NCBI GenBank assembly: GCA_026770705.1
Contig: JANJGN010000026.1
Coordinates: 34,968,001-35,032,000 of the forward strand
Length of the DNA stretch: 64,000 nt
Direction of reading: 5' to 3'
Origin: Isurus oxyrinchus
Taxonomy: Eukaryota
Both the position numbers and the translations under genes were made by a program. This document shows, one piece after another, positions 440 through 63,077 of the stretch. Numbering within the stretch: the stretch's first letter is position 1; every line of letters starts with the position of its first letter. The notes beneath the pieces are model-generated. The model saw nothing but the letters and a program-made list of their open reading frames with translations, had not been told where the DNA came from and ran no database searches.

Positions 440-567
440 CTTCACCAGAGTGACGGCAGTGCTGTAGAAAATGCTCAGGAAGAACAGGATGATGAATGTG
501 GAAGCGGTTGTCCAGATGTTGCCGTTATCATCCTCAGAGTCTTCAATCCAGGTGTGGTCTGTGGAAT
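440..567 (-). CDS. IGHM: IgM heavy chain transmembrane exon TM1
   Basis: tag|...|gtgag bounded 128-nt exon. Translates (D)STDHTWIEDSEDDNGNIWTTASTFIILFFLSIFYSTAVTLVK, carrying the antigen-receptor TM motif. Phase matches the internal Cmu4 donor at 3465/3464. TM2 not found in window. Confidence 0.95.
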
Positions 568-1119
568 CTACGGGGATATAACGGAGCGGATAGAATTAGA
601 TTGTTTATTAATCGAGGATATCTTTTAAAAAATATTCTCTTTACTCTTTCCTAAGTTATTAATGTATTCTCTAATTTAATGTTCAATGTATATCTACTTT
701 TAAGCTCGTGAATTTCAGCAACCTATCTCTGTAACTATCTCCACAGCTGTTCTTCCTTTACAATCCTCATACAGTCCGAGTCGCAAAATATGGAAAATTA
801 TCTCCAGTATCAGTTTATTTTCGAACAATTTTGTACGATCTATTATTGGAGAATGTTATGATGGATAGCGAGAGAGATTCACTGAGCAACCTATTTCGAA
901 ACTGTGGACGTTGCTTTTTAAAATCTCGGCCGTGATTTCCCATCTTGTTTCTTTATTTGTTTTGGAAATGTTTGGTGCGTCATTAACTTAAATCAGTTTC
1001 TCAGTAAGAACATTGTTTCAGTGTGCTTTTTGCATCATTTTGTAAGAGGGACAATTTCCGGAGGATAAGTCGGTTAAAAAAGTACATTTGAGTTATACTT
1101 TCTTCAATAGCCTGGCGTT

Positions 1120-2056
1120 TGTGTCATGCTTTAGCTTTTGTGTATGTGTGCATGAGTATATCTTGCCTTTCATCACTCTTTGTTTCTGTGTCCATATGTG
1201 TGTATGAGTATTGACGTGTGTTTATTTGCCAATGAGTGCTGACTTGTGCATTTTTGTGTTTGCGTCTGCATGTATATTTTGTTTTTTTGTCAATATGTAT
1301 ATATGAGTGTGTTATTGTGTGTGTTTATGCATTGATATCTAGGTTTATTTATTACTATCTGTGTTAATACGTGTTTATGCGTTCTTGTCTGCTAATATGA
1401 GAGTTAATGTTTCTTTTTGTGTTCCACGTATGTGTCAGCATATTAATGTCTGTGTCACAGCGTGTGTGTGTGTGAGTGTGTGTGTGTGCGTGCGAACGTG
1501 TGTGAGAGAGAGTTTTTTATGTGTGCATTTGTGTGTTGATGGATATTTAGAACTATGTATCAATGTGTGTTTATGTTTTCGTACATATTAACGTGTGTTT
1601 TTTGTGTTCTCCTGTGTATAAGCATGTTTCATGTTTGTGTCTACATGTGTGCCTGTGAATGTGTTAGTCTCTTCCTCTATCTGTTTGTCTGTCTGGTTGT
1701 CGTCTGCTCATGTGTGTGCATGTGTCCATGTGTATCGATGCACTTGTTTTAATCTGAATGATAGTGTGTGTCTTTTTGTCTGTATTTCTGTCATTATGAA
1801 TGTGTGATTATGCATATTTGTGTCCTTATATGAGTCTGCTTGTCTGGTTTTATCTGTTTGTGTGTGCGTGATTGTGTATGTGTGTGTGTGTGTGTATGTG
1901 TGCATGCGCGTGCGTGTATTTGTGTGTGTGTGCAATTGTGTATGTGTGTTCCTGTGCCTGCATTTGTGTGTGTATTTGTGTTTGTGTGTGATTGTGTGCA
2001 TGTGTGATTGTGTGTGTGTGTTTGTCTGTTTGGCTGTGTTTGTGTGTGTGTCTGTG

Positions 2057-2091
<35 letters not shown>

Positions 2092-2210
2092 CTATGTGTG
2101 TGTGTGTGTGTGTGTGTGTCTGCCTGTACTGTGTGTGTTTGTGTCTGCGTGTCTATGCGTATGTGTGTATGTATGTTTGTGTGCGTTCATTTGTGTCCCT
2201 TGTGTGCATT
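1120..2210. repeat. Degenerate (TG)n microsatellite tract
   Basis: TG-dinucleotide-rich sequence; source of the V/C-rich spurious ORFs. Confidence 0.9.
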
Positions 2211-3375: not shown

Positions 3376-3402
3376 GAAGTTTGAAATGTAACCAAGAGAC
3401 TC

Positions 3403-3794
3403 TCATTGACATGAATTAACGGTGTCCATCAGTGCAAGAGAAATATTCACAAAACTCGGTTTACCGCTGGATTTATCAACCGTTCTGTTGATGATCTTCA
3501 AGGGGATCGCTTCATGTCCCACCACACAGGAGTAAGAAGCGCCGCTGGCCCACTCCTCCGCTGCAATGGATAACAGGCTGTACATGAAGAAGGAGCGATT
3601 GCCGTTCTCCGCCACCACCTCGGTGTTTTTGTAGTTTCCGGGATTCACCGGCTTGTCATTGACGGTCCACTTGACGAAGATCTCTCGGGGGGAGAAACCT
3701 CTCACTAAGCAGCTGAGGGAGACGAACCTCTGAGCAGAGACATCTTCTGCCGAGGGCAGGAGGACAGACACGGATGGTTCCTGCGGATTTTTGT
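3403..3794 (-). CDS. IGHM: IgM Cmu4 exon plus secretory tailpiece
   Basis: cag acceptor. C1 domain ...[17 protein letters not shown]...[11 protein letters not shown]... followed by shark mu tail [20 protein letters not shown] (N-glycan site, penultimate Cys). Internal G|GTAAA membrane donor at 3465/3464. Confidence 0.97.
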
Positions 3795-4501: not shown

Positions 4502-4810
4502 CTTGTTCCTTGTGGATGGAACTCCTTAAAGGAGTCGGCAGATCCTGACTGCTCACCACGCAGTAGAACTCAGCCCCACTCAGCCAGGCTTGTGTCGAGA
4601 TGTTTACGTTGCTGACCACGCTGCCGGGATGCTCTCCCGGTTGGACAGCAATCTCTGATTTCAAAGGCTTCTTTTCTTGGGTCCAGGACACGAGTACTGG
4701 TTGATGAGCATCAGAAACGATGCAGGTTAAGGTCACCGTCGCTTCCAGCAAGACCTGTTCTATTGGCGGTGGCAGTAGAGTAATTGTGGCATCTCTGCAG
4801 TTGGAACATT
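4502..4810 (-). CDS. IGHM: IgM Cmu3 exon
   Basis: 309 nt, ag/gtgag, phase 1. (E)[32 protein letters not shown]...VSW...[22 protein letters not shown]. Confidence 0.96.
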
Positions 4811-5161: not shown

Positions 5162-5449
5162 CAGACTCGGTGGTGTTTCGACTTAGGGTGACACCTTGAT
5201 GAGTGACCTGACAGGTATAGACCGCGCCGGTGAACAATTCCCCAGCGGAGACTTTCAGCCGACTGGTCGCCGAGAAGTTCCCGTTCATTTCAAAGGCGGG
5301 AGAGGTGACAATTCCTGAATTCATGGGTTGTCCATTCTTCAGCCAATTCACGGTGATTGGCTTTGGACGGAAATCGATGACTGAACAGACTACGGTATCT
5401 TCCTGGCAACTTACGGTTAGGATAACAGCTGGAGGTTGGAAGTCAGTAC
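5162..5449 (-). CDS. IGHM: IgM Cmu2 exon
   Basis: 288 nt, aag/gtaag, phase 1. [39 protein letters not shown]...YTCQVTHQG. Confidence 0.94.
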
Positions 5450-5662: not shown

Positions 5663-5959
5663 ATGGCATTCTAATGCTCTTGTCTGAGCCGCTGTGTCGA
5701 ACCTCACAGTTGATATCGCATCCCCCCTCTGACTCGGTGATGGTTAACTGGCTGCTCAGGGTGAAGGTTCCCTTTTGGTTTCTCACTGACGGGTAAGTCT
5801 TAAATCCAGTGGTGATCTGCTGCCCATCTTTCTTCCAGATCAGGCTGGTGATTTCCGGGGAGTAGTCCATCGCCAAACAGCCGTAGGTGATGGAGCCGTC
5901 GGTGTTTTGTTGCTGACAGGAGGAGACCAGGCTGTAGAGAATGGGCGAAGATGGTGTCG
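5663..5959 (-). CDS. IGHM: IgM Cmu1 exon
   Basis: 297 nt, cag/gtaagt. (A)[45 protein letters not shown]...[16 protein letters not shown], including the probable light-chain-bonding Cys. Confidence 0.96.
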
Positions 5960-6334
5960 CTGGGAAAGAATGGCCGATTGAACAAGTTAGACTCTGTGAT
6001 TTGTGATCAAAAGTAACCAAACAACTCAAAAATTGACGATTAGTATAAACATATCCAAACATATTCCAACTAAAACCCACACCCACATTTGATCATTTAT
6101 TATTTCCATCATTTGGTGACCCTCACCTGTCGGTTCCCTCTTTCGAAACCCACACCTCTTTTTCTGCTTCCATCCAATTTCTGGAAGCCCCCTCCCCTCT
6201 CCACGTCCCCCAAAACAAAGAATAGCAACGGCCCTTCGAAAGTACCTTTGTAATGGTACCTATATAATGACCACAGGACTAAATTGAATACCAGAAATAG
6301 TAGGTACGACATTTTCCAATCGTATGTACATGTG

Positions 6335-7910
6335 AACATGCGGATTAGCAGCAGGAGTAGGCCATTCGGCCTCTGGGGCCTCCTCCACCATTCAATACGA
6401 TCACAGCTGATCTGATTATGGCATTAACTCCACGTTCCCGCCTACTCTCCACTAACCTTTGACTCCCTTGTCAATGAAGAATCTCTCTACCTCTGCCTTG
6501 AAATGTTAATGACTCATCCTCCATCGCTCCCTGGGGAAGACAGTTCCAAAGTTTCACGACCCTTTGAGAGAAAAATAAAATCTCCTCATTTCCTTCTGAA
6601 ACGGGAGACCTCTTATTTTAAACTGTTCCCTATCGTTAGTCTCTCCCCAAGGGGAAACATCCTTTCAGCATCCATCCTGTGAATTCTCCTCAGGATCTTA
6701 TATGTTTCAATAAAATCAGCTCTCATTCTTCTAAACTCTGATGGATACAGGCCCAGCCTATCGAAACTTCCCTCATGAGAGATCCGATGACACCTCCCAG
6801 TATCATTTGAACGAACATTCTCTGAACAGCTTCTAATGCTTTTATATCCTTTCTTAAAGAAGACCAAATCTGTACACAGTAATTCAGACAAGGTCTCATC
6901 AACGCCCTATTAAACTATAGCAAAACATCTTTACTTTTATATTCTATTCCCCTTGTAATAAATGACAACACTCTCTTTGCCTTCCTCATCACTTGCTGTT
7001 CCTGCATTATAACTTTTTGTGATTCATGCACCAAGGGATCCACATTCCTCTGTACCTCAGGGTTCTGCAATCTCTCTCCCTTTCAATAATATGCTGCTTT
7101 TGTATTCTTCCTGCCAAAGTGAACAAGTTAATATTTTGCCACATTATACTCCATCTGTCATTTTTTTGCCCACTCACTGAACCTATCGATATCCTTTTGC
7201 TGACCCTTTATCTCCTCTTCACCATTTACTTTCCTATCTGTGTTTGTGTCATCAGCAAATTTAGCAAATTCATTCAGCCCTTTCATTTAAGTCATTAATA
7301 TAAATTGTAAATAGTTGAGGCCGCAGAATTGATCCCTGTGGCACTCCACTTGTCACATTTGCCAACCTAAAATAACCAATTTATCTCTGCTTTCTGTTTC
7401 CTGTTAGCTAACCAAACATCTACCCATGCCTAAAATGTTACTGCTGACACTATTATTTTGTGCAGTAATCTTTGATGTGCCACTTTGTCAAATGCCTTCT
7501 GGAAACCCAAATATAGCACACCCACAGGTTCTCCTTTATTCATGTTCCTTGTTACTTCCTCTAGAGGCCTCAAAGAAGTCAGCCAAACATGATTTCCCTT
7601 TCACAAAATCATGACTGGTTTGCATAATTGCATTTGAATTTTCTAAGTGAATTTTCTAGATTGCTTAATAATCAATTCCAGCATTTTTGCTCGGACAGAT
7701 GTTAAGCTAACTGGCCTGCAGGTTCTTGCTTTCCCTTTCCCTCCTTTATTTAATATAAAAGCCTCATTCTCTATTTTCCAATCGATGAGACCTTTCCAGA
7801 ATCTAGGGAAGTTTGGAAAATTAAAACCAATGCCTCTGCTATTTTAGTAACCACCTCATTAAGGCCAAAATATTTATCCAACTTCTCTGCCCATTTCCTT
7901 GTTTGCCATT
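6335..7910 (-). mobile_element. CR1-type LINE, 5'-truncated and decayed
   Basis: RT C-terminal fragment RLGLYPSEFRRMRADFIETYKIL, typical 3' UTR, many stops. Confidence 0.85.
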
Positions 7911-8283
7911 ATTACGGGCTTTTCCAATCCATGTCACGTGGCTGGACTGTGGCCCCCCCCAAAGCCCCTCTATATGGCTCCCGGAGCCGTTGTTCAAAAT
8001 GCTGGTAAGGCTGGTAAGTAGAATTGAAGATTTCTGTAAGGAGCTGCTCCTCCAATCAAAGCCTGGTCTTCTACCCTGTTAGCTGTTGCTAGGCTGACTA
8101 GCGGATCAGCAGTAAAAGTGGAAACAAACAGGTTGTGATTGGAGGGGCAGCGAACACCCGCTGGAGAAAGGTGCAGGGAGCCAGGGGGGAAGCGCACAGA
8201 GACATTGTCTCCCTTCTATCCCAGGCACTGAGTGCCTTTCCCCGGGAATGGGAAGGATTTCAGGAGGGGGAGGGACATTGAAG

Positions 8284-8316
<33 letters not shown>

Positions 8317-8349
8317 TGGGGCCCAGGGCATCTGGTTCCTCCGCACGCA

Positions 8350-10010
8350 ATTGCTTTTGCCCGGCTCTCCCCGCTATAAACCGGCTCTCAGCCCATTCTC
8401 CCCTCTGCGTCTCCACTCTCCTGCCTCCCTGCCCTTCCCCCTCCCGCCTCTCTGTCATTCCCCCTCCCACCTCTCTGCCCTTTCCCCCTCCCACCTCTCT
8501 GAACATCCCACCCCCTGCTTCTCTGCATCGGCGCTCTGCCCTTCCCCACCCACCGCTTTGCCCTTCATTCCCGCCTCTCTGCCCTTTCCCACTCCTGCCT
8601 CTGTGCCCATTCCTCCTCCTCTCTTCCCTTTCCCTCCTGCCTCTCTACCCTTTTCCCCCCTTGCATCTGTGCCCTCTCCCTCCTCCTCTCTGTCCTTCCC
8701 CCGCCACCTCCCTGCCCATTCCCACTCCCGCCTCTCTGCCCTATACACCCGCTGCCTCTCTGCTCTTTCCCCCTCCTGCCTCTCTGTCCTTACCTCCTGC
8801 CTCTCTGCTCTTTATCCATCACCTCTCTGCCCTTTCTCCCCCAGCTCTCTACGCGCACTCCACTGCTCTCTGTGCTTTCTTCTGGCTCTCTGACCTTTTC
8901 CACTGGTTCTTTGCCCATTCTCCCAGCTTGCTGCCCTTTCCCCCCTCTGCCTTTCTGCTCTTTCGCCTCCCTGCCCTTTCCCCCACCCGCCGCCTGCCAT
9001 TCCCCCCCCCACCTATGTGCTCTTTCTCCCTCCCGCCTCTCTGCCCTTACCCCCCGCCTCTCTGCCCTTACACCCTACCTCTCTGCTCTTACTCTCCGCC
9101 TCTCTGTCCTTACCCCCTCGCCTCTCTGCCATTTTCCCAGCTCACTGCCCTTTCCATTGACTCTTTGCCCTTTCCATCACCTCTCTGCCCTTCCCCCCGC
9201 CTCTCTGTCCTCCCCACCTCTGCCTCTCTGTCCTGCCTCCTCTCTGCCCTTTCCCCTTCCCACCTCTCTGCCCTTTCCCTCTACCACCTTGCTGCCCTTT
9301 CCCCTCGTTACTCTGCCCACGCCACCCCCCCTGTTTCTCTGCCCTGTCACCCCTCCACCTCTCTGCCCTCCCGCCTCTCTGCCCTTTCCCCCTCCCACCT
9401 CTTTGACTTTACCCCCCACTTCTCTGCCTTTTCTCGTCCAGCTCTCTGCCTTAATGCAGGACTCCCTGTGCTTTCGCCCAGCTCTCTGACCTTTCCCACT
9501 TGCTCTCTGCCCGGTCCCTGGATCACTGATCTTTCTGTCGCCTATCTGCCCTTTCCGTCACCACTCTGCCCGTCCCACCACCCCCTGCTTCTCTGCCCTC
9601 CCATCTCTCTGCCCTTTCCTCCACTCGCCTCTCTGCCCTTTCCCACCCGCCTCTCTGTCCTTTTTCCCCCTGCCTCTCTGCCCTTTCCCCCACCCCCACC
9701 TCTATGCCCTTTCCCCCTACCGCCGTTCTCCCCTCTCTCCTCTCTGCCCTTTCCCCCCCTCCTGTCTGCTCATTCCAGCATCTCTCTGCCCTTCCTCCTC
9801 CCCTGCCTCTCTGCCCTATCACTGGCTCACTGACCTTTCCCCCTGCTCGCTGACCTTTGCCCCATCCCACTGCACTTTCCACTGGATCCCTGCCCTTTTC
9901 CCCGGCCCTCTACCCTTCCCCCCCAACGCCCCCTCCCCTGGCTCTGTGCCATTTCCCCCCCTCCCTGCCCTTTCTCCCAGGCTCTCTGAGCTTTCCCCCG
10001 CCTCCCTGCC
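8350..10010. repeat. Polypyrimidine/polypurine minisatellite (G-rich on - strand) in J-C intron
   Basis: Dozens of ~20-25-nt units with core CCTCTCTGCCCTTTCCCC. Confidence 0.9.
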
Positions 10011-10139
10011 CTTTCTAATAAAGCTCATCGCTCCCTTCAGCAATGCTCCACTTTCCGGCACTGTTAGGCCTCAGGCCTCGCTTCCAGGTCTCTCTTCCCC
10101 GCAGTTCCTGCCTTCCCACACATCGATTTATGAAAAGTG

Positions 10140-10757
10140 ATCGAGTGAGTGAGCGTGTGCATGATTGACAAAGTGAGAGTGGCTGAGTGACAGAGTGAAG
10201 GCGGGTGGCTGGGTGAGTGAGGGTGTGTAGGTGAGTGAGGGTGGGTGGTGAGTGGGCGTGGGTGGATGTCTGAATGTGGGTGAGTGAGGGTGGGTGATTG
10301 AATGAGGGTAGACGAGTGGCTGAGTGAGGGTTGGTGGGTATGTGAGGGTAGGTATGTGAGTGAGGGTGAGTGGGTGTGTGAGGGCAGGTGGATGAGATAT
10401 TGAGTGTCGTGAAGGTAGGTGAGTGAGGATGGGAGGATGAGCGAGGGTGAATGAGTGAGGGTGAGTGAGCGAAGGTTAAAGTAATTGATGGTGAGTGAAT
10501 GAGGGTGAGTGAAGCTGGGTGAGTGGGTGAGGGTGAGTGAGGGTGGGTGAGGGTGTGAGATTGAGTACCGGTGAGTGAGTGAGGGTTGATGAGTGAGGGT
10601 GATTGAGTGAGTGTGAGTGAGGGTGAGTGAGTGTGAGTGAGGGTGAGTGACGGTGAGTGAGTGAGATTGAGTGAGGGTGAGTGATTGTGGGTAGTGAGTG
10701 TGAGTGAGTGTGAGTGAGGGTGAGTGAGTGAGGTGAGGGTGAGTGATTGTGGGTAAT
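10140..10757. repeat. (GAGT/GAGG)n simple repeat
   Basis: GTGAGTGAGG-type tandem units. Confidence 0.9.
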
Positions 10758-10931
10758 GAGGGTGCCCAGGTGCTTCAGGCTCATCAAGGCAATGTTTCTC
10801 CAGATGATTTTCTGCTCCGGCTCAGCTTTCCATTGCCTGTTGTCCACAGCCGAGCTGGGGGCTCCTCCATTCGGCTCCACTACCACCACCTCCTCCTCTT
10901 CCTCTCCATAGGTCCTGTCCTGATTCTCCAT
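10758..10931 (-). pseudogene. SCD5: Stearoyl-CoA desaturase (SCD5-like) first coding exon fragment
   Basis: MENQDRTYG...EQKIIWRNIALMSLKHLGTL matches the desaturase motif (I/V)WRN(I/V)xLMSLLHLG. The short N-terminus is more like SCD5 than SCD1. Truncated by microsatellite; no further exons seen. Confidence 0.7.
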
Positions 10932-11324
10932 ATTGATCAGCTTTCAGTAACACCGACTGTGTAAAGTCAGGCAGCAGTGTAGATCACTGGCCAGCTGCTT
11001 TAATGCTGATGCCTTTCTTTGAGAAACCCATGTCAGTGCGTGAATAGGCAGACTGAGGGGGCTGGAGGGGAAGGTTACAGCAAAACCAGGATGGGCCGTG
11101 CAGGCATCATGCACCAAGTGTGCACCAGTATTGGGGATCCAGGAGGCCATGGTCTCCGCCACACCCTCCCTTTTTCTTGTTTCTTTGTGTTTGCTTCAAC
11201 ACTTGGAAATTCTCCACAAAAATAGTGATGTCACCTGCGTAATTTCATTTTACACAAAAAGGCATCAGAAATGAAACAATGAACATGACTGCAGCTTAAC
11301 GGATCTTCTTTCTGAAATTAGCAT

Positions 11325-11502
11325 NNNNNNNNNNNNNNNNNNNNNNNNNNNNNNNNNNNNNNNNNNNNNNNNNNNNNNNNNNNNNNNNNNNNNNNNNNNN
11401 NNNNNNNNNNNNNNNNNNNNNNNNNNNNNNNNNNNNNNNNNNNNNNNNNNNNNNNNNNNNNNNNNNNNNNNNNNNNNNNNNNNNNNNNNNNNNNNNNNNN
11501 NN
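11325..11502. other. Assembly gap
   Basis: Run of N. Confidence 1.
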
Positions 11503-11504
11503 CA

Positions 11505-12100
11505 TAGGGAGTATAAGCGTGAGAGTGTCTGAGGGAGAGCGCATGTGTGAGAGAGAGTGAATGTGTTTGTGTGTGTGTGTGTGAGAGAGAGTGTAGGGGT
11601 GTGAGTGATATGCAGTATAAGTATATGAGAGAGTGTGTGTGTGGGAGAGAAAGAGTGTGTGAAAGAGAGAACCAGTGTGTGTGTCAGAGAGAGAGAGTGT
11701 GTGTGTGCATGAGAGAGAGAGAATGAGAGCGAGTATGTGTGTGAGAGGAACAGTGTGTGTGTGTGTGTGTGTGTGTTTGTGTGAGGGAATGTATTTGTGT
11801 TTCTGTGTGTGTCAGAGAGAGAGAATGAGGATGTGTGTGTGTGAGAGAGTGTTATGTGTCTGTGTGTGAGAGAGCGGGAGAACTGAGAGTGTGTATGTGT
11901 GTGTGGGAGAGAGGGTGCATGTATGTGAGATAGAGAGTGGCTGTGTGTAAAATAGAGAGTGTGCGCGTGTGTGTGTGTGTGTGAGAGAGAATGCATGTGC
12001 GAGAGTGCATGTGTGAGAAAGAAAGAGTGCATGTATGTGTTTGGGAGAAAGTGTGCACATGTGTGCGCAGTTGAGAGAGTATGTGTATGAGAGAATGTGA
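11505..12100. repeat. (TG)n/(GA)n mixed microsatellite
   Basis: TG and GA dinucleotide tracts. Confidence 0.9.
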
Positions 12101-12809
12101 GCGATCCAATGGCTCAGTTTTTGATGGTGGCTCCTTTTTCCCAAATCCCCCGTGGCTGGTTATTTGGAGCGGGAGTCTGGTCATTGTCCATTCCAATTGT
12201 TTAAATATCTCACAGCCTCTGATCCAATCAGAACCGGCGCTGCTCTCTGGAGCCTCACTGTCACTCCCTGATTCTGTTTGTTCTGAAATTGTGCTCAAGT
12301 TCAGCTCACTCACGTTCAATGATTTTCTGATACTCAAAATGCTTAAATATAATTAATTTATTAAAATTTATACATGTTCTCTGCAGAAATATTGTTAAAA
12401 ATAATTAATGTGTGCTATTTCAACTGAGCAATGGAACAACTTATTTTCACAGTTTCGGCTTGAAAAACCATGGCCAGTTAGTTCGATGCTGATTCAATTT
12501 GTTTGACCTCTGCAGGGAGAAGACTCCCAGGTCAGGAACAGGACAAGTTAAGATATGGATTAAATTCCCCACTCCTACCCCAGTACACTCCTGTCACCAG
12601 CTGCAAGGGTGGGATTCAACAGAAAGCCAACTCTCCACTGAACTGTCAAACACTCCGGGGCAGGTACAGCACTGGTTTGACATAAAATAAAACTCTCTCT
12701 ACATTGTTCCATCAAATATGCCCAGGAAAGGGTTCAATCCGATTTTGATATCAGTGCTGTGCTGCAGGAGCCGGTCAGAGGCTGGGAATTCTGTGGTGAG
12801 TAATTCAAC

Positions 12810-13345
12810 TCTTATTGCCCAAAGAAATCTGACCATCTACAAGGCTCAAGTCAGGACTGGGATTGAATAGTTTCCGCTTGCCTCAATGTGTGAAACTTCA
12901 AAAAACCCCAAGAAACTCCATACTATCCAGGATAAGGCAGCCCACAGAATTGGTACCCCATCCACTACCTTAAAGATTCACTCCCTCCCCCTCTGACGCA
13001 CAGTGACAGCAGTGTGTATCATATACAAGATGCACTGCAGCAACTCGCCAAGGCTCCTTCAAAACCTGCAATCTCTCCCAACAAGAAGGACAAGGGCAGC
13101 ATGTGCTTGAAACACTGCCACCTGTACGTTCCCCTCCAAGACACTGAACATCCTGACTTGGAACTATATCACTGTTCCTTCACTGTCAAAGGGTCAAAAT
13201 CCTGGAACTCCCGACCTAACAGAACTGTGAGTGAACTTGCAGCTATTCAAGGAGGTGGCATTTCAACACTTCCAAGGATGGGCAGTTAGGATGGGCAACA
13301 AATGCTGGCCTCGCCAGCGACCCCAACATCCTATGATAGGATTAA
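12810..13345 (+). mobile_element. LINE 3' fragment (HER1-like)
   Basis: Decayed RT C-terminus plus the GGGATGGGCAA(T/C)AAATGCTGGCC tail. Confidence 0.7.
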
Positions 13346-16300
13346 AAATAAGATACAGAGTAATTTCTTCCTCCGCATTGTCCAACCAAATAGGTCAAGG
13401 ACTGCTACAGCACAGATTAAAATAGGATAAAACTCTCTCTACGTTGCCTAACTGAACACTCCCAAGACGCATACATCACTGGCTTGAAATGGACCAAACC
13501 TCCTTCGACAGTCTGTCTGTCATTTCTGAATTGTCCTTTCTGACTGTCACAATGGGTTGGGCATCTCATTTCTGTGGCGCCTGTTCAAAAAGTCAAACTT
13601 TCACATTTCTCACAAATACAAGTTTTGCGAAGAAATAAATCGATCTGCACTTCCTGAAATACAGGAGAGTGAACCAGAAGGTTAACAACCAGCCAGGAAG
13701 ATTCTTGGTCCAAGCACAGTGACCACGCACACAGAAACAGAACAGATCACACAAAAATGGTGCAACAATCGAGTTCCCAGCAGATAGATCTGTTCAATCT
13801 GTCCATTTCATTCAAGCTGTTTGATTCTAATTGATCAATGTCAATTTGTTACAATTATTCTATAACTTTGAAATTTAACTGATTTTCATTTCAAAACTGC
13901 CTTTGAAGTCCATCTAATTCTCCTCTGACTCAAATCTCCAAACAATGTACGATTTAAGTTACCCTGAAAATGAGCACAGAAAATACTACAGATTCAGGAT
14001 AATTGGTTGTCCGTAATAAAGACTCAATGACAGGGTAAGAATTAAACAAATCAGGAAACATTCACATTGAAAACCGATTACCCAGTGATTTCACTTGATG
14101 TTAGGTATAAATATAACCAATAAAAACATCGAGGCAAAACGCATTATCGAGTTGAGCACAGCTGAGTAAGAAAAGTATTCTTTTCTGGATTCATTTTGGA
14201 TACAATTAAAAATTCTCTCCACTCTTTGAGATTTTGCATTCACTATAATGTGCAGTACACTATTTAATTGTTGGAGTTCATTTATGTTGAATTAATTATC
14301 ATTAATATTATATTGTAAGTTAATTATCTTGTTATTTTCAATTCATTTTCTTGTTAGCTGATTTCTACTTTATAATAAAAGTAGTTTTCAATGATTGAAA
14401 ATTTGTTTCTCCTTGGTACTTTGTGAAATAATTGAGGTTTATTTAAATCAACCTGACACTGAAACAATGTTAAACAATAAACTTCAAATTACTAGATGGT
14501 AACATTCAGGCAAGTATATCAATTTTACTTAAATCTGATCAATATTTACTATTTTACTTTTACTTCTCCTGCTCTGTTTTAATGGACAAAATTATAAACT
14601 ATGCGTTTCTGAACAGATTGAGAAATCATAAATTCCATCTATTCTCATCAAGCAATTCACACGATGAATTTATGAGTTGAATATTTGAAACAATTTCAAA
14701 TCTGACCGGGGTCACATCGCTTAACTGTCGATGAGGTGTAATATCATCTGTTTGCCGAATTAAACTTGTCTTAACTCCAAGCTACATGTAAACAAGTCTT
14801 CCTGCCAGTTACTTATTATCAATAAAATTGCTTCCTCGATAACTATCTCTATAATTTAATTGTTAATTATATTGTTCACTGAAAGAAGATCCAAATTGAT
14901 CAGTATAAAACTTGATGAGAACAATTCATTCAGATCATCTGCACCAATGAAATATAACCGGCAAATTGATTCCACATTTTGTCCTTCAATTTCATATTTA
15001 ATAAGAATTAAGCATGAATCTCAGATATAGTTTGTTCTTTGCCGATAATTCTATTCTGTGCACAGCACAGCAATGGAGACCGGATGTTGTTATTAGGTTC
15101 TAAACGAATACTAATGTTTGCAATTAAATTAACCTGTTCGCAGTTCAAGCCTTTCCTTGTCAATCTCTATTCAAATGCAGTCTGCACCTTCCTACAGTTC
15201 AGAAAAAAGTAAGAACAATTCCTTTTCTGCCAGCGAATTACACCCCCCAGTAAACTGTTTAAAATTAGATTAGTGACAATTATCTCGCTATCCAAATCTC
15301 AATGACATTGAAGGAATAATATGGTTACGACTGCACAGGAAGAATGTAACAACCGGATAGACATATTGCCAAACTGCAAGGTCAAACTCCTCGTTAAGTC
15401 AATGCAATTGTTATCAGTGATATAAAAAAGTAATTCAAAATCTCTTTTGAAGCTGAACAATTCTGTAGAGTCAGTATATTCCTACTGAAATTTTTTCATG
15501 CATAATCACAAAATGTTTCCAGCCTAAAAACTTTCCCGATCATGTTAATTGTGCGCAGAGCACAGCAGAATTGTGAAAGGCGATTAATGATCAATTATGT
15601 TAATATGAAAGATGTTCCGTCAATATGGAGAAATATTATCACATTATAATCGTTTGAATTGTATTAATTTTACTCTACAATTTGAAAACTTGGTAATTTT
15701 ATAGTTTCTGATTGCAGTAACGAATTATGTTCTGAATGAGCGTCATAATCCATGGTTTAGTTTAATCTGCAATTATCACTTAAAATAAAGACAAAATGTT
15801 CTAACACACCTGTAAGTGCTTTTTTTCCCCATTTCTGAAACCTGTCTGTTTTCTGCCTACAATCGCGCTTCAAGCAGATACAAACGCGGAGGCTGCTTCG
15901 ATTCAATCGCAAAACGTGTAACCGCGCAATGTCATCGAGTTTAAACAAAGCAGAAACAATGCAGAACCGCCAAACAGTTTCATAAATTCTACTAATTCAA
16001 AGTCACCCAGACACACAATCTCCTCAGCAGAAAAAACACCAAAATCACATCACCGAGGGGCTGAAACCTGTTTCACGGAGAAGCAGCTCAATTCTGCAAA
16101 CACTTTCAACAGAATCCAATGTCATATTGCAAGAAAATCTCAATATCGAATCCAGACAACCGCTCGTCACCAAATGAATGAATAATTAAACTAAACAGAA
16201 ATATAGAATAATGTCAACAGCATTGTGAGTAGGCGTAACATGTTCAATAAATTAATATTAAAACTTAAGCAGATTTTGGTAAAATTGGGTTTGATTTCAA

Positions 16301-16671
16301 ACATATTTAAACCCTTGTGCAACAGATGGTAAAACCCGCAGCGATTAGATGTCACCGAGATTAAACATTGCAGAAACGTCAAACTGTTTTTACAAACGTT
16401 AGATATTTCAAGTAGTCCGGCCAGACAGTATCCTCAGCAGATAAAAACAAAATCACAACAACCAGGGTCTCAATCCCTCAGCAACACTTCTTATCAAGAC
16501 ACAGCGGAATTATATAACTCAATTTCAGCAGGATCACATGAAACATTATAAAAACATTCTGCATACAGAATCCACCAAACCCAGGTTTCATTGGCTGAAT
16601 GAATTATTAAAATAGACAAAAAAAGCAAAGACTCAAATAAAACAGTTACGAAATAAATGTGTGGTTCTTAC

Positions 16672-16719
16672 CGGCAGTCACTGTCATCATGGTCCCTTTC
16701 CCCCAGTAGCCCATCCCGT
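16672..16719 (-). CDS. IGHJ: IgH joining segment JH
   Basis: (D)GMGYWGKGTMMTVTA with WGxG motif and gtaag donor. G|CG joins Cmu1 in frame. Confidence 0.95.
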
Positions 16720-16758
16720 CACAGTGTTACATTCCCTGGGCTGTGCCATACAATAAAT
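16720..16758 (-). promoter_or_regulatory. JH 23-RSS
   Basis: CACAGTG-23 nt-ACAATAAAT; nonamer is degenerate. Confidence 0.85.
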
Positions 16759-17081: not shown

Positions 17082-17150
17082 GGTTTTTGTATTGTTAGTA
17101 ACTGCTGTGCCACCCAGTATTTCACAGTGAGACACACCATGTCAAATACT
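17082..17150 (-). other. IGHD: IgH D2 segment (coding 17110-17122, AAATACTGGGTGG) with 12/12 RSS
   Basis: GGTTTTTGT-12-TGCTGTG [D] CACAGTG-12-TCAAATACT. Confidence 0.93.
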
Positions 17151-17456: not shown

Positions 17457-17539
17457 GGTTTTTGTATGAGGATGTCGCTGTGCACAGCACTGTGACCAAC
17501 TGCTGTAGTATCACAGTGAAATACACCCGCACAAAAACT
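17457..17539 (-). other. IGHD: IgH D1 segment (coding 17495-17511, ATACTACAGCAGTTGGT) with 12/22 RSS
   Basis: GGTTTTTGT-22-CACTGTG [D] CACAGTG-12-ACAAAAACT; the 12/22 layout is typical of shark D1. Confidence 0.94.
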
Positions 17540-17902: not shown

Positions 17903-17941
17903 TGTTCTTGTTCTGGTCCAGCCCTGGTCCATCTCGCTGTG
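17903..17941 (-). promoter_or_regulatory. VH 23-RSS
   Basis: CACAGCG-23 nt-ACAAGAACA directly after YYCAKD. Confidence 0.9.
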
Positions 17942-18246
17942 GTCTTTTGCACAGTAATAGATGGCGGTGTCTTCAGTCTTCAGGCTCGTCATGTCCAAGG
18001 AGAAGATGTTCCTTGAAGTGTCTTTGGACGCAGTGAATCGATTCTTAATTGCTGGGGCATAGCTGTTGTCCGATGAACTATAGTAGGTAAGCAGCCACTC
18101 CAGCCCCTGTCCGGGAACCTGTCGGACCCAGTACATGTAGTAGCTGCCAAGATCGAAGCCGCTGGTTTGACAGGTCAGTCTCAGGGAGCCTCCGGGACGC
18201 CCGGTCTCTGCCTCTGGCTGAGTCAACACAACCTCCGACTGGACAC
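17942..18246 (-). CDS. IGHV: IgM VH exon
   Basis: [51 protein letters not shown]...[11 protein letters not shown]. Open frame; both Cys and the Trp intact. Confidence 0.97.
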
Positions 18247-18374: not shown

Positions 18375-18420
18375 GGGATAAGAAAGTCAGCAATAAACTG
18401 AGAGAAATCGCCGACCTCAT
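18375..18420 (-). CDS. IGHV: VH leader exon
   Basis: 46 nt, MRSAISLSLLLTFLS(R), gtgagt donor; in frame with the V exon. Confidence 0.93.
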
Positions 18421-18504
18421 CCTTCGGGTCATTTGGGGAAAATGGTTCTGTCCAGAACTCAGTGAACAAACCAGCTCCCGGACTGTTGGATTCCGGTCCC
18501 AGTG

Positions 18505-41013: not shown

Positions 41014-41141
41014 NNNNNNNNNNNNNNNNNNNNNNNNNNNNNNNNNNNNNNNNNNNNNNNNNNNNNNNNNNNNNNNNNNNNNNNNNNNNNNNNNNNNNNN
41101 NNNNNNNNNNNNNNNNNNNNNNNNNNNNNNNNNNNNNNNNN
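41014..41141. other. Assembly gap
   Basis: Run of N. Confidence 1.
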
Positions 41142-53167: not shown

Positions 53168-53636
53168 ATGCTCCCAGTGCCCCTTAATGATAATAATGAT
53201 CTTACTGCCTGGTGAGTCAATGTTTAAATGGTCAGTGTCTGTTCCATTTGTTATATTCAATTCCAGATATTTGATACGTTCTGTGTTTTGTTCCAGGAAC
53301 AAATGGTCAAGATTCAGTGTCCCAGGATCCCCCTAAATTAGCGGCTCTTGAAGGACAAGGCATAAAACTGGAATGTATTTATTCGGCAGCTGGTGTAATT
53401 CTGTTCTGGTACATCCAGTACCCCGGGGAAGCTCCGAGATATTTAATGAAGATATATAGCTCGGGGAATGCAGAAAATTTCCAGATTTCCCAGATAGATT
53501 CTCCGCTGTTTTGCACAATGGGAACAAAACGGTTCCTTTAAATACCGCTGGGGCTTTTCTCTCCGACAGCGCCGTGTATTTCTGTGCCATGGAGCCCACA
53601 CTGCTGCAGAGATATAGCGTATCCCGTACAAAAACC
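53168..53636 (+). pseudogene. TRAV/TRDV: TCR alpha/delta-type V (leader to 53211, V exon 53297-53596, RSS 53597-53636), frameshifted
   Basis: QDSVSQDPPKLAALEGQGIKLECIYS...WYIQYPGEAPRYL / DRFSAVL...SDSAVYFCAME. 1-nt deletion near 53480; first ATG out of phase; CACACTG-24-ACAAAAACC. Confidence 0.88.
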
Positions 53637-55030: not shown

Positions 55031-55162
55031 GTCACACCTCTCTCTGAGTTAAGGAAGTGAACTGTGAAGAGCTCATCAGAAGCAGGGCACAACCGGGGTT
55101 TATGTTGGGAAGCAATCTCACTCCCCAGTACTTTGTGCTGTGCTTGGGAGCTCCTGCCTGTT

Positions 55163-55762: not shown

Positions 55763-56302
55763 ATGAAGCTGAGCCTCACTTTAGTGATCATCTCCCTGGA
55801 TTTCTTACTTTTCCCTCCGTGTTAGTGTGCTCACTATTCCTGACCAGAATATTTTATACATCCCTTATGTTGTTTTACATTGTACTTTACTTTATTGCAT
55901 ATCTTCTATTATCTTGTTCTTATTGTTCTATATTATAGTTTATTGTGCTAGATAATATTGATTTCATCTTATTACTCTATATCTACATATTCTTCTCAGA
56001 CTCCACTGACAGTGAAGAAATGTCACAATCTCCCAAGTCAGTGGTTGCTACCAAAGGAGAAACTTCATCGTTCAGCTGTTCCATTAGAGTAGGAGGACAG
56101 ATCCTACATTGGTACAGGCAACACCCGGACAGAACCGTGCAGCACCTGGCCAGTGTTCGGGACAGGATCACAGCTCGGCTGATTGCAGTAGAGAAGAGCA
56201 GTGCTCTGAATGTTAGTGATGCTCGAGTGACAGACACCACCACCTATTTCTATGCGGTTGGGACACAGTCCAGCAAAGATCAGTAGAGATCGTACAAACA
56301 CC
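55763..56302 (+). pseudogene. TRAV/TRDV: TCR-type V ORF (leader 55763-55820, V exon 56000-56263, RSS 56264-56302) lacking second Cys and CDR2
   Basis: MKLSLTLVIISLDFLLFPP|YSTDSEEMSQSPKSVVATKGETSSFSCSI...WYRQHPDRTVQHLASVRDRITA...TDTTTYFYAVG. Intact splice sites; CACAGTC-23-ACAAACACC. Confidence 0.85.
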
Positions 56303-58066: not shown

Positions 58067-58091
58067 GCACTAACTGGAACTCTCAGTGTGG

Positions 58092-58622
58092 GGTTTTTGA
58101 ACGGGGTCCACGTCTCTGCAACAGTATGGGCTCTCTGGCGCAGAAATATACCGCGCTGTCAGAGATCAGGGCATTGCAGATCATTAGCTCGGTAATCTTG
58201 GCTGTTTTATTTAACATAGCTGAAAAGCGATCGGTCATGTCGGTGTGTCTGTATTGTTTCCCTCCCCGAATGTGAAGCATGTACTGTGGAGGCTACCCGC
58301 GGCGCTGACTGTACCAGTACACATAAGGGTTAGAATCGCTTGTTTTCAAGGTGCAAGTTAGTGTGACATTACTTTAATCTTCCGCCGTTATTTCAGCAAC
58401 TGGTTGTTCCACTGTCTCTGGGTGGCTCCATTCTAACATAAAACAATAGCAATAACAACAATCAGCATCAGCCTCATATAAGTAAACATAATCGTCATCA
58501 ACATCACCATTTTCTTACTAAAAACAACATCTTGGTTACAGCATCAGGAAGAGAATGGAGTTTTACTGGGAAGGAAATACTTACTGAGAAGTGATGAGGA
58601 GCGGAGCGAGACGGTTCCCCAT
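58092..58622 (-). pseudogene. TRAV/TRDV: TCR alpha/delta-type V pseudogene (V exon 58129-58432)
   Basis: ETVEQPVAEITAED*SNVTLTCTLKTSDSNPYVYWYSQRRG*PPQYML...DRFSA...SDSAVYFCARE. Two stops, frameshifted leader, CATACTG-21-TCAAAAACC. Confidence 0.88.
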
Positions 58623-59079: not shown

Positions 59080-61615
59080 AGAACATAAAACATAACATAA
59101 GAATATAAGAACGAGCAGCAGGTGTAGGCGATTCAGTCCCTCGAACCTGCCCAGCTATTCAATACGATCATGGCTGATTTCATTTCGGCCTCAACTGCAA
59201 TATCCCATCCTCTCCCCATAACCATAACCCATTACTAATTAAAAATCTGTCTATCTCCTCCTTCAATTTATTCAACGTCCTGGCATACATTGCACTCTGA
59301 GGTAGTGAATTCCACAGATTCACGGCCCTTTGAGAAAAGTAATTGCTCCTCATTTATGATTTAAATCTGCCACCCCTTAGCCTAAAACTATGGCCTCTCG
59401 TTCTAGAATGCCCCACAAGTGAAAACATCCGCTCCACGTCTACTTCATCTATTCCCTTTAGCATCTTCTATACCTCAATTAGATCTCCTCTCACCCTTCT
59501 AAACTCGAGCGAATATCGGCCTAAACCGTTTAATCTCTCCTCATAAGACAAGCCCCGCATCTCTGGAACCAATCTAGTAAACCTGCTCTGAACTGCCTTC
59601 AATGCAATTACATCCTTCCTCAAGTAAGCGTACCATAACTGTGCACAGTACTCCAGGTAAGGTCTCACCAATACCTTGAACAATTGCAACAACACTTTCC
59701 TATTTTTATCCACTATTCCTTTTGCAATAAATGCCAAAATTCCATTTTTCTTCCTTCTTACCTGCTGTACGTGCATACTAACTTTCAGCGATTCATGCAC
59801 GAGGACACCCGGATCCCTCTGCACTGAAGCATTCTCAAGTTTCTCTCCATTTAAATAATAAGTTGCCTTTTTATTCTTCCAACCAAAATTGATAACCTCA
59901 TCTGTGATAAACTCCATCTGCCAAATTTTGGCCCGTTCACCTAAGCTGCCCATATCCATTTGTAAATTTCTCACTTCTTCACTGCAACTTACTTTCCTAC
60001 TTACTTTGGTGTCATATGAAAATTTAGCTACAGTGCCTTCTATCCCTAAATCCAAGTCATTAATTTAGATTGTAGATAGTTGGGGCCCAAGGACCGAACC
60101 TTTTGGCACCCCACTAGTTACAGCTTGCCATCTAGAAAAAGAGCCATTTATCCAGAACCTCTGCTTTCTGTTGGTTAGCCAATCCTCTATCCAAACTAAT
60201 ATATAACCCCTAACTCCTTGTGATCTTACCTTGTTTATTAATCTTATGTGTGATACCTTATCAAATGCCTTCTGGAAGTCCAGATATACTACAACCACAG
60301 GATCCCCATTATCCACTTTGCTTGTCATATCTTCAAAGAACTCTAGAAAATTAGTCAAACACGAGTTACTCTTCATAAAACCATGTTGACGCTGATGGAT
60401 TGCATTTTGACTTTCTAAATGCCCCATTACTATTTCCTTAATAATGGATTCCAACAATTTCCCAACGACAGACTTTAAACTAACTGGTCTGTAGTTTCCT
60501 ACTTTCTACCTCCCCACTTTTTGAATAAGGGAGTTATATTAGCATTTTTCCAATCCACTGGATCCAGAAAATTTTGGAATATTATAGCCAATGCATCCAA
60601 TATCTCTGCTGCCACTTCCTTCAAGGTCCTGGGATGTAAGCCAGCTGGTCCTGGGGGCTTGTCACCCTTTAATCCCAATAGTTTGTTCAGTTCATTTTCT
60701 CTAGTGATGGTGATTGTTCTACGTTCCTCCTTCTCTATACCTTCTGCAATACCTGTTACTATTCGGGTGGCACTAGTCTCCTTCACTGTGAAAATTGGGG
60801 CAAAATATTGATTAAGCATCTCTGCCATTTCTGCATTCCCCACTATTAACTCCCCAGTCTCATCCTCTAAAGTGCTAACATTCGCTTTAGCTACTCTATT
60901 TCCTTTTATATACTTGTAGAAGCTTTTGCTCTCAGTCTTTACATTTTGTGCTAGTTTTCTTTCATTAGTTACCTTTTTTCTTTTTATTATTTTTTCAGTA
61001 ACCCTTTGTTGATCTTTAAACTTTTCCCAATCCTCCAGCCTGCCATTGAACTATGCAATTTGGTATGCCTTAGTTTTTGCCTTTAACTTCCTTGCTTAGC
61101 TGTGGATGCTCCCCGCCCCCTACCTCTTACCGTCTTTCTTCCTCTTTGAAATACATTTTCCTTGGGAGGAATTGAATACCTCCTTAATTATCTGCCACGG
61201 TTCATCAACTGTCGTACTTTGTCGTCTTCCTGCCCAGTCTACCAGGGCCAAATCTGCCCCCACGCCTATGTAGTTACCTTTGTTCAACTCCAGAACACTA
61301 ATGTGGGACTCAAGTTTCTCGCTCTCAAACTGAACCTGAAATTCTAGCATGCTATGGTCACTCTTCCCTAGAAGATCCTTTACTATGCGGTCATTAATTA
61401 ATCCCATGTCATTCCACAAAACCAAATCCAGTATAGCCTGCTCCTTCTTTGGTTCCACAGCATATTGCTCCAAGAAACAATCTCTCATATACTCCTTGAA
61501 CTCTCCCTCGAGGCTCCCTTGCCAATTTCATTAGTCCGGTCAATCTGCATATTACACTCACCCATCATTATTGCCGTGCCTTTCTTACGTGCTTCCAGTA
61601 TTTCCTGGTTTATAC
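59080..61615 (-). mobile_element. CR1 LINE, 2.5-kb ORF2 remnant
   Basis: Endonuclease end (AILDLVL...GKSDH) and RT motifs (QHGFMK, YLDFQKAFDKVSH, GVPKGSVLGP). Confidence 0.92.
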
Positions 61616-62085
61616 TGTAATAAATGAATATAATATTTCCCTCTTTTTTGCTCACAAAATGATGGTCTTGGATTTTCGAATTTTCTGCTAATGGAAACAA
61701 TTATACACAATATACCACATCAAATTTCTTATCTTTTTCAATATTTCGATTAAATGTCTCCTTTGATAATTTGACAGAAGAAGACTAATAACTGCTTCTC
61801 TAGCCTGCTTACATTGAGGACATCTCCCCTGGTACATTCCAATCTACTTTCTCCAACACCTTGACATTCATGTAAATGGTATTTCCTTGGTGGCTAAAGA
61901 GTGGGTTATAAAGAATTATCATTGCTTTCCGCCATAAACATCAAGAAAAATAAAGACCGAGTCTGATTAGATCCAATTTAGATTTCGAAGAGAACATATC
62001 TGACATTGGTGTTTTGATATGTGAATCAATGAACGCGAAATCCACTCGATGGTCGGAACTTCTAGAACGGATTGAACATAATCCG

Positions 62086-62140
62086 CCAGCAGAGGGCGCC
62101 AAACCCAAGCATGCTAATTAGAATGTCACGTGTCATCAAA
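62086..62140 (+). promoter_or_regulatory. CTCF motif and CRE/E-box-like element upstream of V leader
   Basis: CCAGCAGAGGGCGC (62086-62099) and TGTCACGTGTCATCA; separated from the leader by a CR1 3' fragment (62160-62450). Confidence 0.6.
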
Positions 62141-62576
62141 GCTAAAGCCAATAAAGATGGTACCCTGAGTAAGGTCTGTCAGAGTGAGAGGTCGCCCATT
62201 TAAAACAGGGATGAAGAGGAATTTCTTCCCTCAGTGATGGTGAATCTGTTTATCCCAAAGGACTGCAGAAGCAGGGCCGTTAAATATATCCAAGGCCGAG
62301 GACAGATTTTTAATCAGTAGGAGAATCAAGGGTTATGGGGAAAAGGCAGGAAACTGGAGTTGCATATTATGAGATCAGCCATGCTCTCGTTGAATGGCGG
62401 AGCAGATTGGTGGACTGAATGGCCTATTTCTGCACTTATAGTCTTATGGCAACAGTGGGCCTGGCCCCCTGCAGTGTGTGGGTGGAACAATGAGATGAAC
62501 AGAGCCCGGGTTCGCTCTCTCCTTCTCAATCTCTGGAACTTTCCATTCACATTCACTGAGAGAGTTTCACTCAGTC

Positions 62577-63077
62577 ATGTTTCTGATAATACTGGCGGCT
62601 CTGTTGGACAGTAAGTGCTGGATTATGTTTATCAATATAGATTAGCAGGTTGGTCCAAAGAGCTTGTACTAGGAATTAATGTAGGTAATCATAGTTTGGT
62701 AAATTGGAATTTACGAATACTCATAGAGTTCGATTGAGTCTCTTTAAATTTCTGCTCTTTTCTTCATCTATTTTCACAGGCAGACTATGTGCAGATCCAG
62801 TAACGTAATCACCGGTGACATTAACTGCGCTGGAAGGGGACTCGGTGCAGTTAGATTGTATATATACAGTATGCAATGGTATCGGCAGAAACCGGCACAA
62901 ACTGTAAGTTGGGTAATCAACAAACTAATAGGACTGAAAATAGTTGAAATCTCAGGACGATAACTGACGGCTGCTGACGCATCTAAGAAGTCCCGTTATC
63001 TCAAAATAAGTGGCCTGAGTGCGGAGAGCGCTCTGAGGCCCAGTGTCAGTTAAAAGCCGAAAACCTGTACAGAAAAC
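62577..63077 (+). pseudogene. TRAV/TRDV: TCR alpha/delta-type V pseudogene (leader 62577-62610, V exon 62780-63038)
   Basis: MFLIILAALLD|...DPVT*SPVTLTALEGDSVQLDCIYT / WYRQKPAQT...GR*...LKISGLSAESALR. Stops, frameshift, VYYC deleted; CCCAGTG-23-ACAGAAAAC. Confidence 0.85.

What the first reader, a model, noticed from the sequence alone, without database searches (positions are those of the whole stretch)
440..63077. Intact IgM cluster about 35 kb from an array of TCR alpha/delta-type V segments
Seen: a full IgM minilocus with open frames, matching splice phases and proper RSS lies beside about 8 TCR-type V segments carrying 23-type RSS. Known: sharks make chimeric IgHV-D delta-J delta-C delta TCR chains, and IgH V segments or clusters have been linked to the TCR alpha/delta locus. 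Inference: this VH (23-RSS) or D1 (3' 22-RSS) could join TCR delta 12-RSS in cis, by inversion if the TCR D/J lie rightward on +. One locus could then serve both B cells (it keeps all C, secretory and TM1 exons) and T cells.
Basis: partly seen in the sequence, partly recalled or inferred. Interest (0 to 1): 0.85.

Follow-up and report, generated by a model that had tools for sequence, protein, structure and literature searches.

The report
Shark IgM gene beside dead TCR V segments
This is a complete, ordinary-looking shark IgM antibody gene cluster lying 35 kb from a handful of mostly broken T-cell-receptor V segments, an antibody/T-cell-receptor neighbourhood that a 2025 paper already reported for sharks and rays.

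Summary
On the minus strand, 18432-293, lies one complete elasmobranch IgM minicluster: leader, VH, D1, D2, JH, Cmu1-4, secretory tail, TM1 and TM2. All frames are open, all splice phases match, and six recombination signals (RSS) show the expected 23 / 12-22 / 12-12 / 23 geometry. From 53.2 to 63.5 kb lie five recognisable TCR alpha/delta-type V bodies and two or three scraps, in mixed orientation. Four of the five are broken. The fifth is open but lacks the second cysteine. Only two keep a CAC-heptamer 23-type RSS. No TCR D, J or C segment is in the window.

Both gaps lie outside exons, beside simple repeats. I could not test continuity across them.

RNA-like contigs from four runs show the leader intron spliced out, V-(20-26 nt)-J joints and J spliced to a Cmu1-like exon, so this V family is used as IgM. 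None showed a TCR partner, and they consistently differ from this VH at marker positions.

The linkage, and the idea that it makes VH-to-TCR-delta joining easy, were published by Flajnik et al. 2025 (PMC12227049). This scan had also noted the same arrangement on other pieces of this genome. Dual B/T use of this cluster remains untested. Verdict: real, ordinary, already known.

The parts
18375..18432 (-). VH leader exon (ATG at 18432, ends in phase 1). A TATA-like TATTTAAAT lies at about 18518-18510.
   Evidence: Read. RNA-like contigs of this V family cover 18376-18507, and the leader-intron joint 18246/18375 is seen in 4 runs.
17942..18246 (-). VH exon with an open frame: Cys, Trp, YYC; CDR1 [10 protein letters not shown]; CDR2 YYSSSDNS.
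   Evidence: Pfam V-set E 4e-19. 79-86% identical to shark IgM VH, including Heterodontus HV01.
17903..17941 (-). VH 23-RSS (CACAGCG, 23-bp spacer, ACAAGAACA).
17457..17539 (-). D1 (17511-17495) with a 5' 12-RSS and a 3' 22-RSS (perfect heptamer and nonamer).
17082..17150 (-). D2 (17122-17110) with a 12-RSS on each side.
16672..16758 (-). JH: 23-RSS (16758-16720) and J coding 16719-16672 (WGKGT motif), donor in phase 1.
   Evidence: V-J joints at 16714/17947-17950 with 20-26 letters between, and a loose end at 16672 that reads a Cmu1-like start.
5664..16671 (-). JH-Cmu1 intron (16671-5960; the Cmu1 exon 5959-5663 is listed separately). It contains gap 1 (11325-11502), a sense-strand G-rich 21-24-bp repeat (8232-10016), GT/GA simple repeats and LINE fragments.
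5663..5959 (-). Cmu1 exon, phase 1 in and out.
   Evidence: C1-set E 3e-13.
5162..5449 (-). Cmu2 exon, phase 1 in and out.
   Evidence: C1-set E 3e-18.
4502..4810 (-). Cmu3 exon, phase 1 in and out.
   Evidence: C1-set E 2e-8.
3403..3794 (-). Cmu4 exon with secretory tail ([20 protein letters not shown], then stop). The internal donor for the membrane form is at 3465/3464.
   Evidence: C1-set E 2e-21. 85-95% identical to shark Cmu4 sequences.
440..567 (-). TM1 exon (acidic linker plus transmembrane segment TTASTFIILFFLSIFYSTAVTLVK).
293..301 (-). TM2 exon (Ile-Lys-stop).
53188..53636 (+). TCR alpha/delta-type V 'A': short leader, V exon with a frameshift at about 53470-53490, RSS CACACTG, 24-bp spacer, ACAAAAACC.
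   Evidence: Best PDB matches are TCR alpha V domains, E 2e-14 to 1e-8.
55764..56302 (+). TCR alpha-type V 'B': leader, open V exon, Tyr in place of the second Cys, short C'-C'' stretch, RSS CACAGTC, 23-bp spacer, ACAAACACC.
   Evidence: PDB top hits are TCR alpha V, E about 1e-8.
58090..58621 (-). TCR-type V 'C': leader, V exon with two in-frame stops (58377-58375 and 58295-58293), heptamer mutated to CATACTG.
62794..62960 (+). TCR-type V fragment 'D' (stop and frameshift, truncated).
63174..63453 (-). TCR-type V relic 'E', same family as A; several stops and frameshifts, no RSS found.
41014..41141 (.). Assembly gap 2, intergenic, followed by a TG-rich simple repeat.

Best explanation
This is a standard elasmobranch IgM heavy-chain minicluster. 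It sits in the shark 'antigen-receptor complex', the chromosome region where IgH clusters are interspersed with TCR alpha/delta-type V segments. It most likely works as an ordinary B-cell gene in four steps.
1. RAG joins VH (23-RSS) to D1 (12/22), D2 (12/12) and JH (23) inside the cluster.
2. The leader intron is removed.
3. The joined VDJ exon is spliced over a 10.7-kb intron to Cmu1-4.
4. The transcript ends either in the secretory tail or, through the internal donor in Cmu4, in TM1-TM2.

The TCR-type V segments 35-45 kb upstream are decaying relics among LINE fragments and satellites. They have no role in this gene.

Shown: the anatomy, open frames, splice phases and RSS; and use of the V family in spliced, rearranged V-D-J-Cmu transcripts. 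Inferred: that this very copy is expressed, and that the letters on either side of the two gaps are continuous.
For: - All exons, phases and six RSS were read directly.
- Pfam gives V-set for the VH and C1-set for all four constant exons.
- The VH is 79-86% identical and Cmu4 85-95% identical to shark IgM sequences.
- Five near-consensus RSS are found against 0.135 expected by chance.
- Exactly one J-like motif and one set of Cmu exons occur in the window.
- RNA-like contigs show the predicted leader splice, V-J joints with 20-26 inserted letters, and a J donor continuing into a sequence that matches the Cmu1 start at 18 of 20 letters.
- The TCR-type V bodies carry a frameshift, stops, a lost Cys or a lost heptamer. 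They lie among reverse-transcriptase fragments.
- The same neighbourhood is published for four elasmobranchs (PMC12227049).
Against: - Expression of this very copy is not shown. In all four runs the contigs read Lys where this VH has Gln (18169-18167), and they differ at further positions. Most transcripts therefore come from other clusters, individuals or species.
- Gap 1 lies between the V-D-D-J part and the Cmu part, so their belonging to one cluster rests on orientation, spacing and the absence of any other partner in the window.
- Nothing here excludes that T cells also use the VH.
Confidence: 0.82

Rival explanations
1. Dual-use cluster. Besides making IgM in B cells, this VH (or VH-D1) is joined by RAG, on the same chromosome, to TCR D-delta/J-delta. 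It is then expressed with C-delta in gamma/delta T cells.
For: - The VH has a 23-RSS and D1 a 3' 22-RSS, both compatible with 12-RSS partners.
- TCR-type V relics lie in the window.
- Unchecked scan notes place NAR-TCR and TCR V segments on both sides of the window, and a D-delta-J-delta-C-delta unit about 5.03 Mb before it on the same piece.
- Joining of IgM and IgW VH to TCR D-delta is described as common in sharks, and as favoured by this linkage (PMC12227049).
Against: - There is no TCR D, J or C in the window.
- No contig laid on the V region ran on into a TCR J or C. The one long loose end after the V reads like another IgH J (...GACTACT...).
- The distance to D-delta would be megabases, and the orientation is unknown.
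- The test had little power: contigs only, and not specific to this copy.
Confidence: 0.2
2. Assembly artefact. One or both gaps are mis-joins, so that the V-D-D-J part, the Cmu part and the TCR-type V relics are not truly neighbours.
For: - Two gaps of estimated length lie exactly between the three parts.
- Each gap abuts a simple repeat on one side.
- The region is rich in satellites and paralogous clusters, which are prone to mis-assembly.
Against: - The V-D-D-J and Cmu parts have the same orientation. Each is the only one of its kind in the window, and their spacing gives a plausible intron.
- GT/GA-type simple repeats occur on both sides of gap 1 (10147-10764 and 11503-12030).
- The same IgM/TCR-V neighbourhood was noted on several other pieces of this genome. 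It is also published from chromosome-level assemblies of four species.
Confidence: 0.07
3. Silent copy. The cluster is intact in sequence but is not, or only barely, rearranged and expressed. It would be one of many paralogous IgM clusters.
For: - Expressed contigs in four runs differ from this VH at fixed positions. At 18169, 98-100% of the depth carries the other letter. Positions 18426 and 18070-18071 also differ.
- The V nonamer has 2 mismatches and the J nonamer 3.
Against: - All frames, splice sites and RSS heptamers are intact.
- In run X2 about 2% of the depth at 18169 keeps the window's letter.
- Contigs drop rare variants, and the runs may come from other individuals or species.
Confidence: 0.15

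Closest known systems
Elasmobranch IgM heavy-chain minicluster (VH-D1-D2-JH-Cmu1-4-TM), as first described in the horn shark Heterodontus francisci
   Same: One VH, two D and one JH with RSS spacers 23 / 12-22 / 12-12 / 23. Four C1-set exons, a secretory tail and two TM exons. The VH is 79% identical to Heterodontus HV01.
   Different: Nothing of kind. The JH-Cmu1 intron is long (10.7 kb plus a gap) and carries a G-rich repeat and LINE pieces.
The shark/ray antigen-receptor complex (AgRC) of Flajnik et al. 2025, Sci Adv 11:eadw1273 (PMC12227049)
   Same: IgM clusters close to TCR alpha/delta, with TCR-alpha/delta-type V exons lying between IgH clusters. That proximity is offered as the explanation for VH-to-TCR-D-delta joining.
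   Different: The species of this window was not identified. Best VH matches are Mustelus asterias 86% and Scyliorhinus torazame 84-85%. It may or may not be one of the four species in that paper. Here the TCR-type V segments are shown one by one to be dead or defective.
[quoted passage not shown] Cited through refs 26, 27 and 33 of PMC12227049; the original papers are not held in the library.
   Same: An IgH-type V with a 23-RSS in a TCR-V-rich region.
   Different: A TAILV or VH-delta is a lone V that depends on TCR D-J-C. This VH has its own D1, D2, JH and a full Cmu gene, and it groups with bona fide IgM VH.

Membership tests
Elasmobranch IgM minicluster | Single VH with split leader, conserved Cys/Trp/YYC and a 23-RSS | tested here: met
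   (V-set E 4e-19). RSS at 17941-17903.
Elasmobranch IgM minicluster | Two D segments with RSS 12/22-23 and 12/12, and a JH with 23-RSS, WGxG motif and splice donor | tested here: met
Elasmobranch IgM minicluster | Four C1-set Cmu exons in matching phase, secretory tail with glycosylation site and penultimate-region Cys, TM1 and TM2 | tested here: met
Elasmobranch IgM minicluster | Rearranged and expressed as V-D-D-J-Cmu mRNA | tested here: inconclusive
   Shown for the V family: leader splice, V-J joints and a J-to-Cmu1-like loose end. Not shown for this copy, because the contigs differ from it at marker positions.
Functional TCR alpha/delta V gene segment | Open V-set exon with both cysteines, a leader and a 23-RSS with a CAC heptamer | tested here: not met
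   A has a frameshift. B has Tyr for the second Cys and a short C'-C''. C has two stops and a CAT heptamer. D and E are fragments. Likeness to TCR V-alpha is met for A and B.
Ig-TCR-delta chimeric V / TAILV | V found joined to D-delta/J-delta and spliced to C-delta in transcripts | tested here: inconclusive
   No such contig among four runs laid on 16400-18700. These were contigs only, so power is low.
Ig-TCR-delta chimeric V / TAILV | Lone IgH-like V without its own D-J-C, inside the TCR alpha/delta locus | tested here: not met
   This VH is followed by its own D1, D2, JH and Cmu gene.
Shark antigen-receptor complex (IgH clusters linked to TCR alpha/delta) | IgH cluster and TCR alpha/delta-type V exons on one stretch of chromosome, with TCR D/J/C and PSMB5 on the same scaffold | tested here: inconclusive
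   The first half is met within the window, subject to gap 2. The second half rests only on unchecked scan notes. It is not testable from the window.

The most novel reading that the evidence does not exclude
This one intact IgM cluster, embedded in a megabase-scale TCR alpha/delta and NAR-TCR V array, might be used by both lymphocyte lineages. It would be rearranged internally and expressed with Cmu in B cells. In T cells its VH would be joined on the same chromosome to D-delta-J-delta-C-delta. The shark 'trans-rearrangements' would then be ordinary cis events, and a single germline V would be selected for two receptor contexts.
Probability: 0.2. Interest if true: 0.55.

Novelty: already known. 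Interest (0 to 1): 0.27.

Why it matters
The linkage of antibody and T-cell-receptor genes in sharks bears on how the two receptor systems arose, and on why shark gamma/delta T cells borrow antibody V segments. That linkage was published in 2025. This window adds only one well-annotated example. It offers a fully intact IgM cluster with distinctive markers (Gln in FR1, CDR1 [13 protein letters not shown]2 YYSSSDNS) that could serve as a copy-specific probe for asking whether a single cluster serves both B and T cells. It also documents that the TCR-type V segments between IgH clusters can be dead relics and not working genes.

Tried and rejected
1. A regex and RSS scan for further V, J or C segments found one VH, one JH, one Cmu set and no TCR J or C.

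2. Species identification failed by VH and by Cmu4 protein search. There was no self-match. Best hits were Mustelus asterias 86%, Scyliorhinus torazame 84-85%, and an unnamed ENA protein at 95% for Cmu4.

3. Expression and chimera test. No listed run held more than a quarter of the sampled words, and all runs were Logan contigs with RNA status only guessed. Laying four of them gave IgM-type joints only, with no TCR partner. This is no evidence against T-cell use.

4. Gap continuity. The only read-laying run was already spent.

6. The original nurse-shark papers (PMC7039070, PMC3222143) are not held. No supplementary table of PMC12227049 is held.

7. Exons were searched one by one by reference.

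8. Reading the VH as a TAILV was rejected, because it has its own D-D-J-Cmu.
Full report
**What is in the window.** The window is 64,000 bases with two runs of N, at 11325-11502 and 41014-41141. A motif scan of all six frames found one antibody-type V exon and two constant-type exons, all on the minus strand below 18.3 kb. A scan for recombination signals (RSS) found near-perfect signals clustered at 17.0-17.9 kb and at 53.6 and 56.3 kb. Five signals have at most two mismatches in all, against 0.135 expected in block shuffles (maximum 2 in 200 shuffles). All five abut a coding segment.

**The IgM cluster.** Reading the minus strand gives a complete cluster.
- Leader: ATG at 18432, ending at 18375 in phase 1.
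- Leader intron: 128 bp.
- V 23-RSS: 17941-17903.
- D1: 17511-17495, between a 12-RSS and a perfect heptamer and nonamer with a 22-bp spacer.
- D2: 17122-17110, between two 12-RSS.
- JH: a 23-RSS, then coding 16719-16672 (GYWGKGTMMTVTA) with a phase-1 donor.
- Cmu1 5959-5663, Cmu2 5449-5162, Cmu3 4810-4502 and Cmu4 3794-3403, each entered and left in phase 1.
- A secretory tail ending ...[14 protein letters not shown].
- An internal donor at 3465/3464, TM1 567-440 and TM2 301-293.

Pfam calls the VH V-set (E 4e-19) and all four constant exons C1-set. The VH is 79-86% identical to shark IgM VH, Heterodontus HV01 among them. Cmu4 is 85-95% identical to shark sequences. Two database gene models that combine such a VH with a C domain turned out to be V-D-J-Cmu1, not TCR chimeras. 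There is only one J-like motif and one set of Cmu exons in the window.

**The gaps.** Gap 1 lies in the JH-Cmu1 intron, which spans 16671-5960, about 10.7 kb including the gap's estimated 178 letters. Gap 2 is intergenic. Neither touches an exon, so no reading frame depends on them. Gap 1 has unique sequence on its left and a GT/GA simple repeat on its right (11503-12030). A similar GTGA-type repeat lies further left, at 10147-10764. Gap 2 is followed by a TG-rich repeat. This is what a break in simple repeats looks like, but it is not proof of continuity. I could not test continuity. The case that V-D-D-J and Cmu form one cluster rests on their shared strand, on each being the only possible partner in the window, and on a plausible spacing.

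**The TCR-type V segments.** Searches with the V pieces, translations and the DNA itself give five recognisable V bodies.
- A (53188-53636, +) has a frameshift near a duplicated TTCCAGAT motif. It keeps an excellent RSS with a 24-bp spacer.
- B (55764-56302, +) has a leader, an open frame and a 23-RSS. It reads YFYA instead of YFCA and has a short C'-C'' stretch.
- C (58621-58090, -) has two in-frame stops, and its heptamer is CATACTG.
- D (62794-962, +) is a truncated fragment with a stop and a frameshift.
- E (63453-63174, -) belongs to the same family as A. It has several stops and frameshifts, and I found no RSS.

Scraps lie at 55288-55317, 57024-57053 and perhaps 54821-55057. A and B resemble TCR alpha V domains best among solved structures. 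The surviving half of C is ambiguous between VH and TCR alpha/delta V.

They are in mixed orientation and none is clearly functional. They lie among LINE reverse-transcriptase fragments. Between them and the IgM cluster are a 4.8-kb 27/54-bp satellite and other repeats.

**Expression.** No public run held more than a quarter of the sampled words of 16650-18450. All listed runs are Logan contigs whose RNA status is a guess. Laid on 16400-18700 at 90% likeness, four such runs showed the following.
- The exact predicted leader-intron joint (18246/18375) in all four.
- V-to-J joints (16714-16715 to 17947-17950) with 20-26 inserted letters in three.
- A loose end at the J donor (16672). Reverse-complemented, it matches the start of Cmu1 at 18 of 20 letters.

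The VH family is therefore transcribed, rearranged and spliced to Cmu. No contig continued from the V into a TCR J or C. The one long loose end after the V reads like another IgH J.

Two cautions apply. Contigs cannot show rare forms. In addition, the contigs differ consistently from this VH: nearly all read Lys where it has Gln, at 18169-18167. They therefore come mostly from other clusters, individuals or species. Expression of this very copy is not shown.

**What is known.**

This scan had already noted the same arrangement on several other pieces of this genome, and one follow-up pointed to the 2025 paper. Unchecked scan notes add three things:
- NAR-TCR and TCR V segments about 17-20 kb before the window.
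- Further TCR V families 15-21 kb after it.
- A VH-D-delta-J-delta-C-delta unit about 5.03 Mb before it on the same piece.

If these notes are right, the cluster is embedded in a very large V array. I could not verify them.

**Verdict.** The IgM cluster is real, complete and ordinary in kind. The TCR-type V segments are real but mostly dead. The linkage and its suggested consequence are published. The VH is not a TAILV, since it has its own D-D-J-Cmu. Whether this cluster is also used by T cells is allowed by the 12/23 rule but has no support here. I put it at about 0.2. The species was not identified: it is a shark, with best matches in the Carcharhiniformes.

Noticed in passing
window 8232-10016 (sense strand is minus): The JH-Cmu1 intron holds about 70 units of a 21-24-bp repeat that is G-rich on the transcribed sense strand (GC 0.61, GC skew -0.52 on +). 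It is reminiscent of a switch region. It is followed by (GGGTGAGTGA)n at 10147-10764. The scan already has a separate note on this (s1-869137).
   Followed up: partly
window 55764-56302 (+): TCR alpha-type V 'B' has a leader, an open frame and a good 23-RSS. It has Tyr for the second canonical Cys and a shortened C'-C'' region. It may be a very young pseudogene or an odd V. The scan has a separate note on it (s1-869139).
   Followed up: partly
window 31378-36221 and 28414-29086: A 27/54-bp satellite array of about 4.8 kb, with a shorter copy of the same unit in inverted orientation 2.3 kb upstream.
   Followed up: no
window 44508-45244: Three tandem copies of a 245-bp unit at 99-100% identity. 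This is either a very recent duplication or an assembly slip.
   Followed up: no
window 59468-61488 (-) and 6613-7573 (-): Broken LINE reverse-transcriptase ORFs (RVT_1, E 5e-13). One set lies among the TCR V relics and one inside the JH-Cmu1 intron.
   Followed up: partly
proteins P0034 and P0033: A protein 93% identical to this Cmu4 is filed under Aeromonas veronii, and a VH-like protein under Klebsiella pneumoniae. These are probably vertebrate DNA contamination in public bacterial assemblies.
   Followed up: no
window 18169-18167, 18426, 18070-18071: RNA-like contigs of four runs consistently differ from this VH at these positions (for example Lys for Gln in FR1). These positions could serve as copy-specific markers.
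   Followed up: partly
window 58004-57967 (-): An RSS-like site (CACAGAG, 22-bp spacer, ACACAACCC) lies about 90 bp downstream of dead V 'C', with no coding segment next to it. It may be chance.
   Followed up: no
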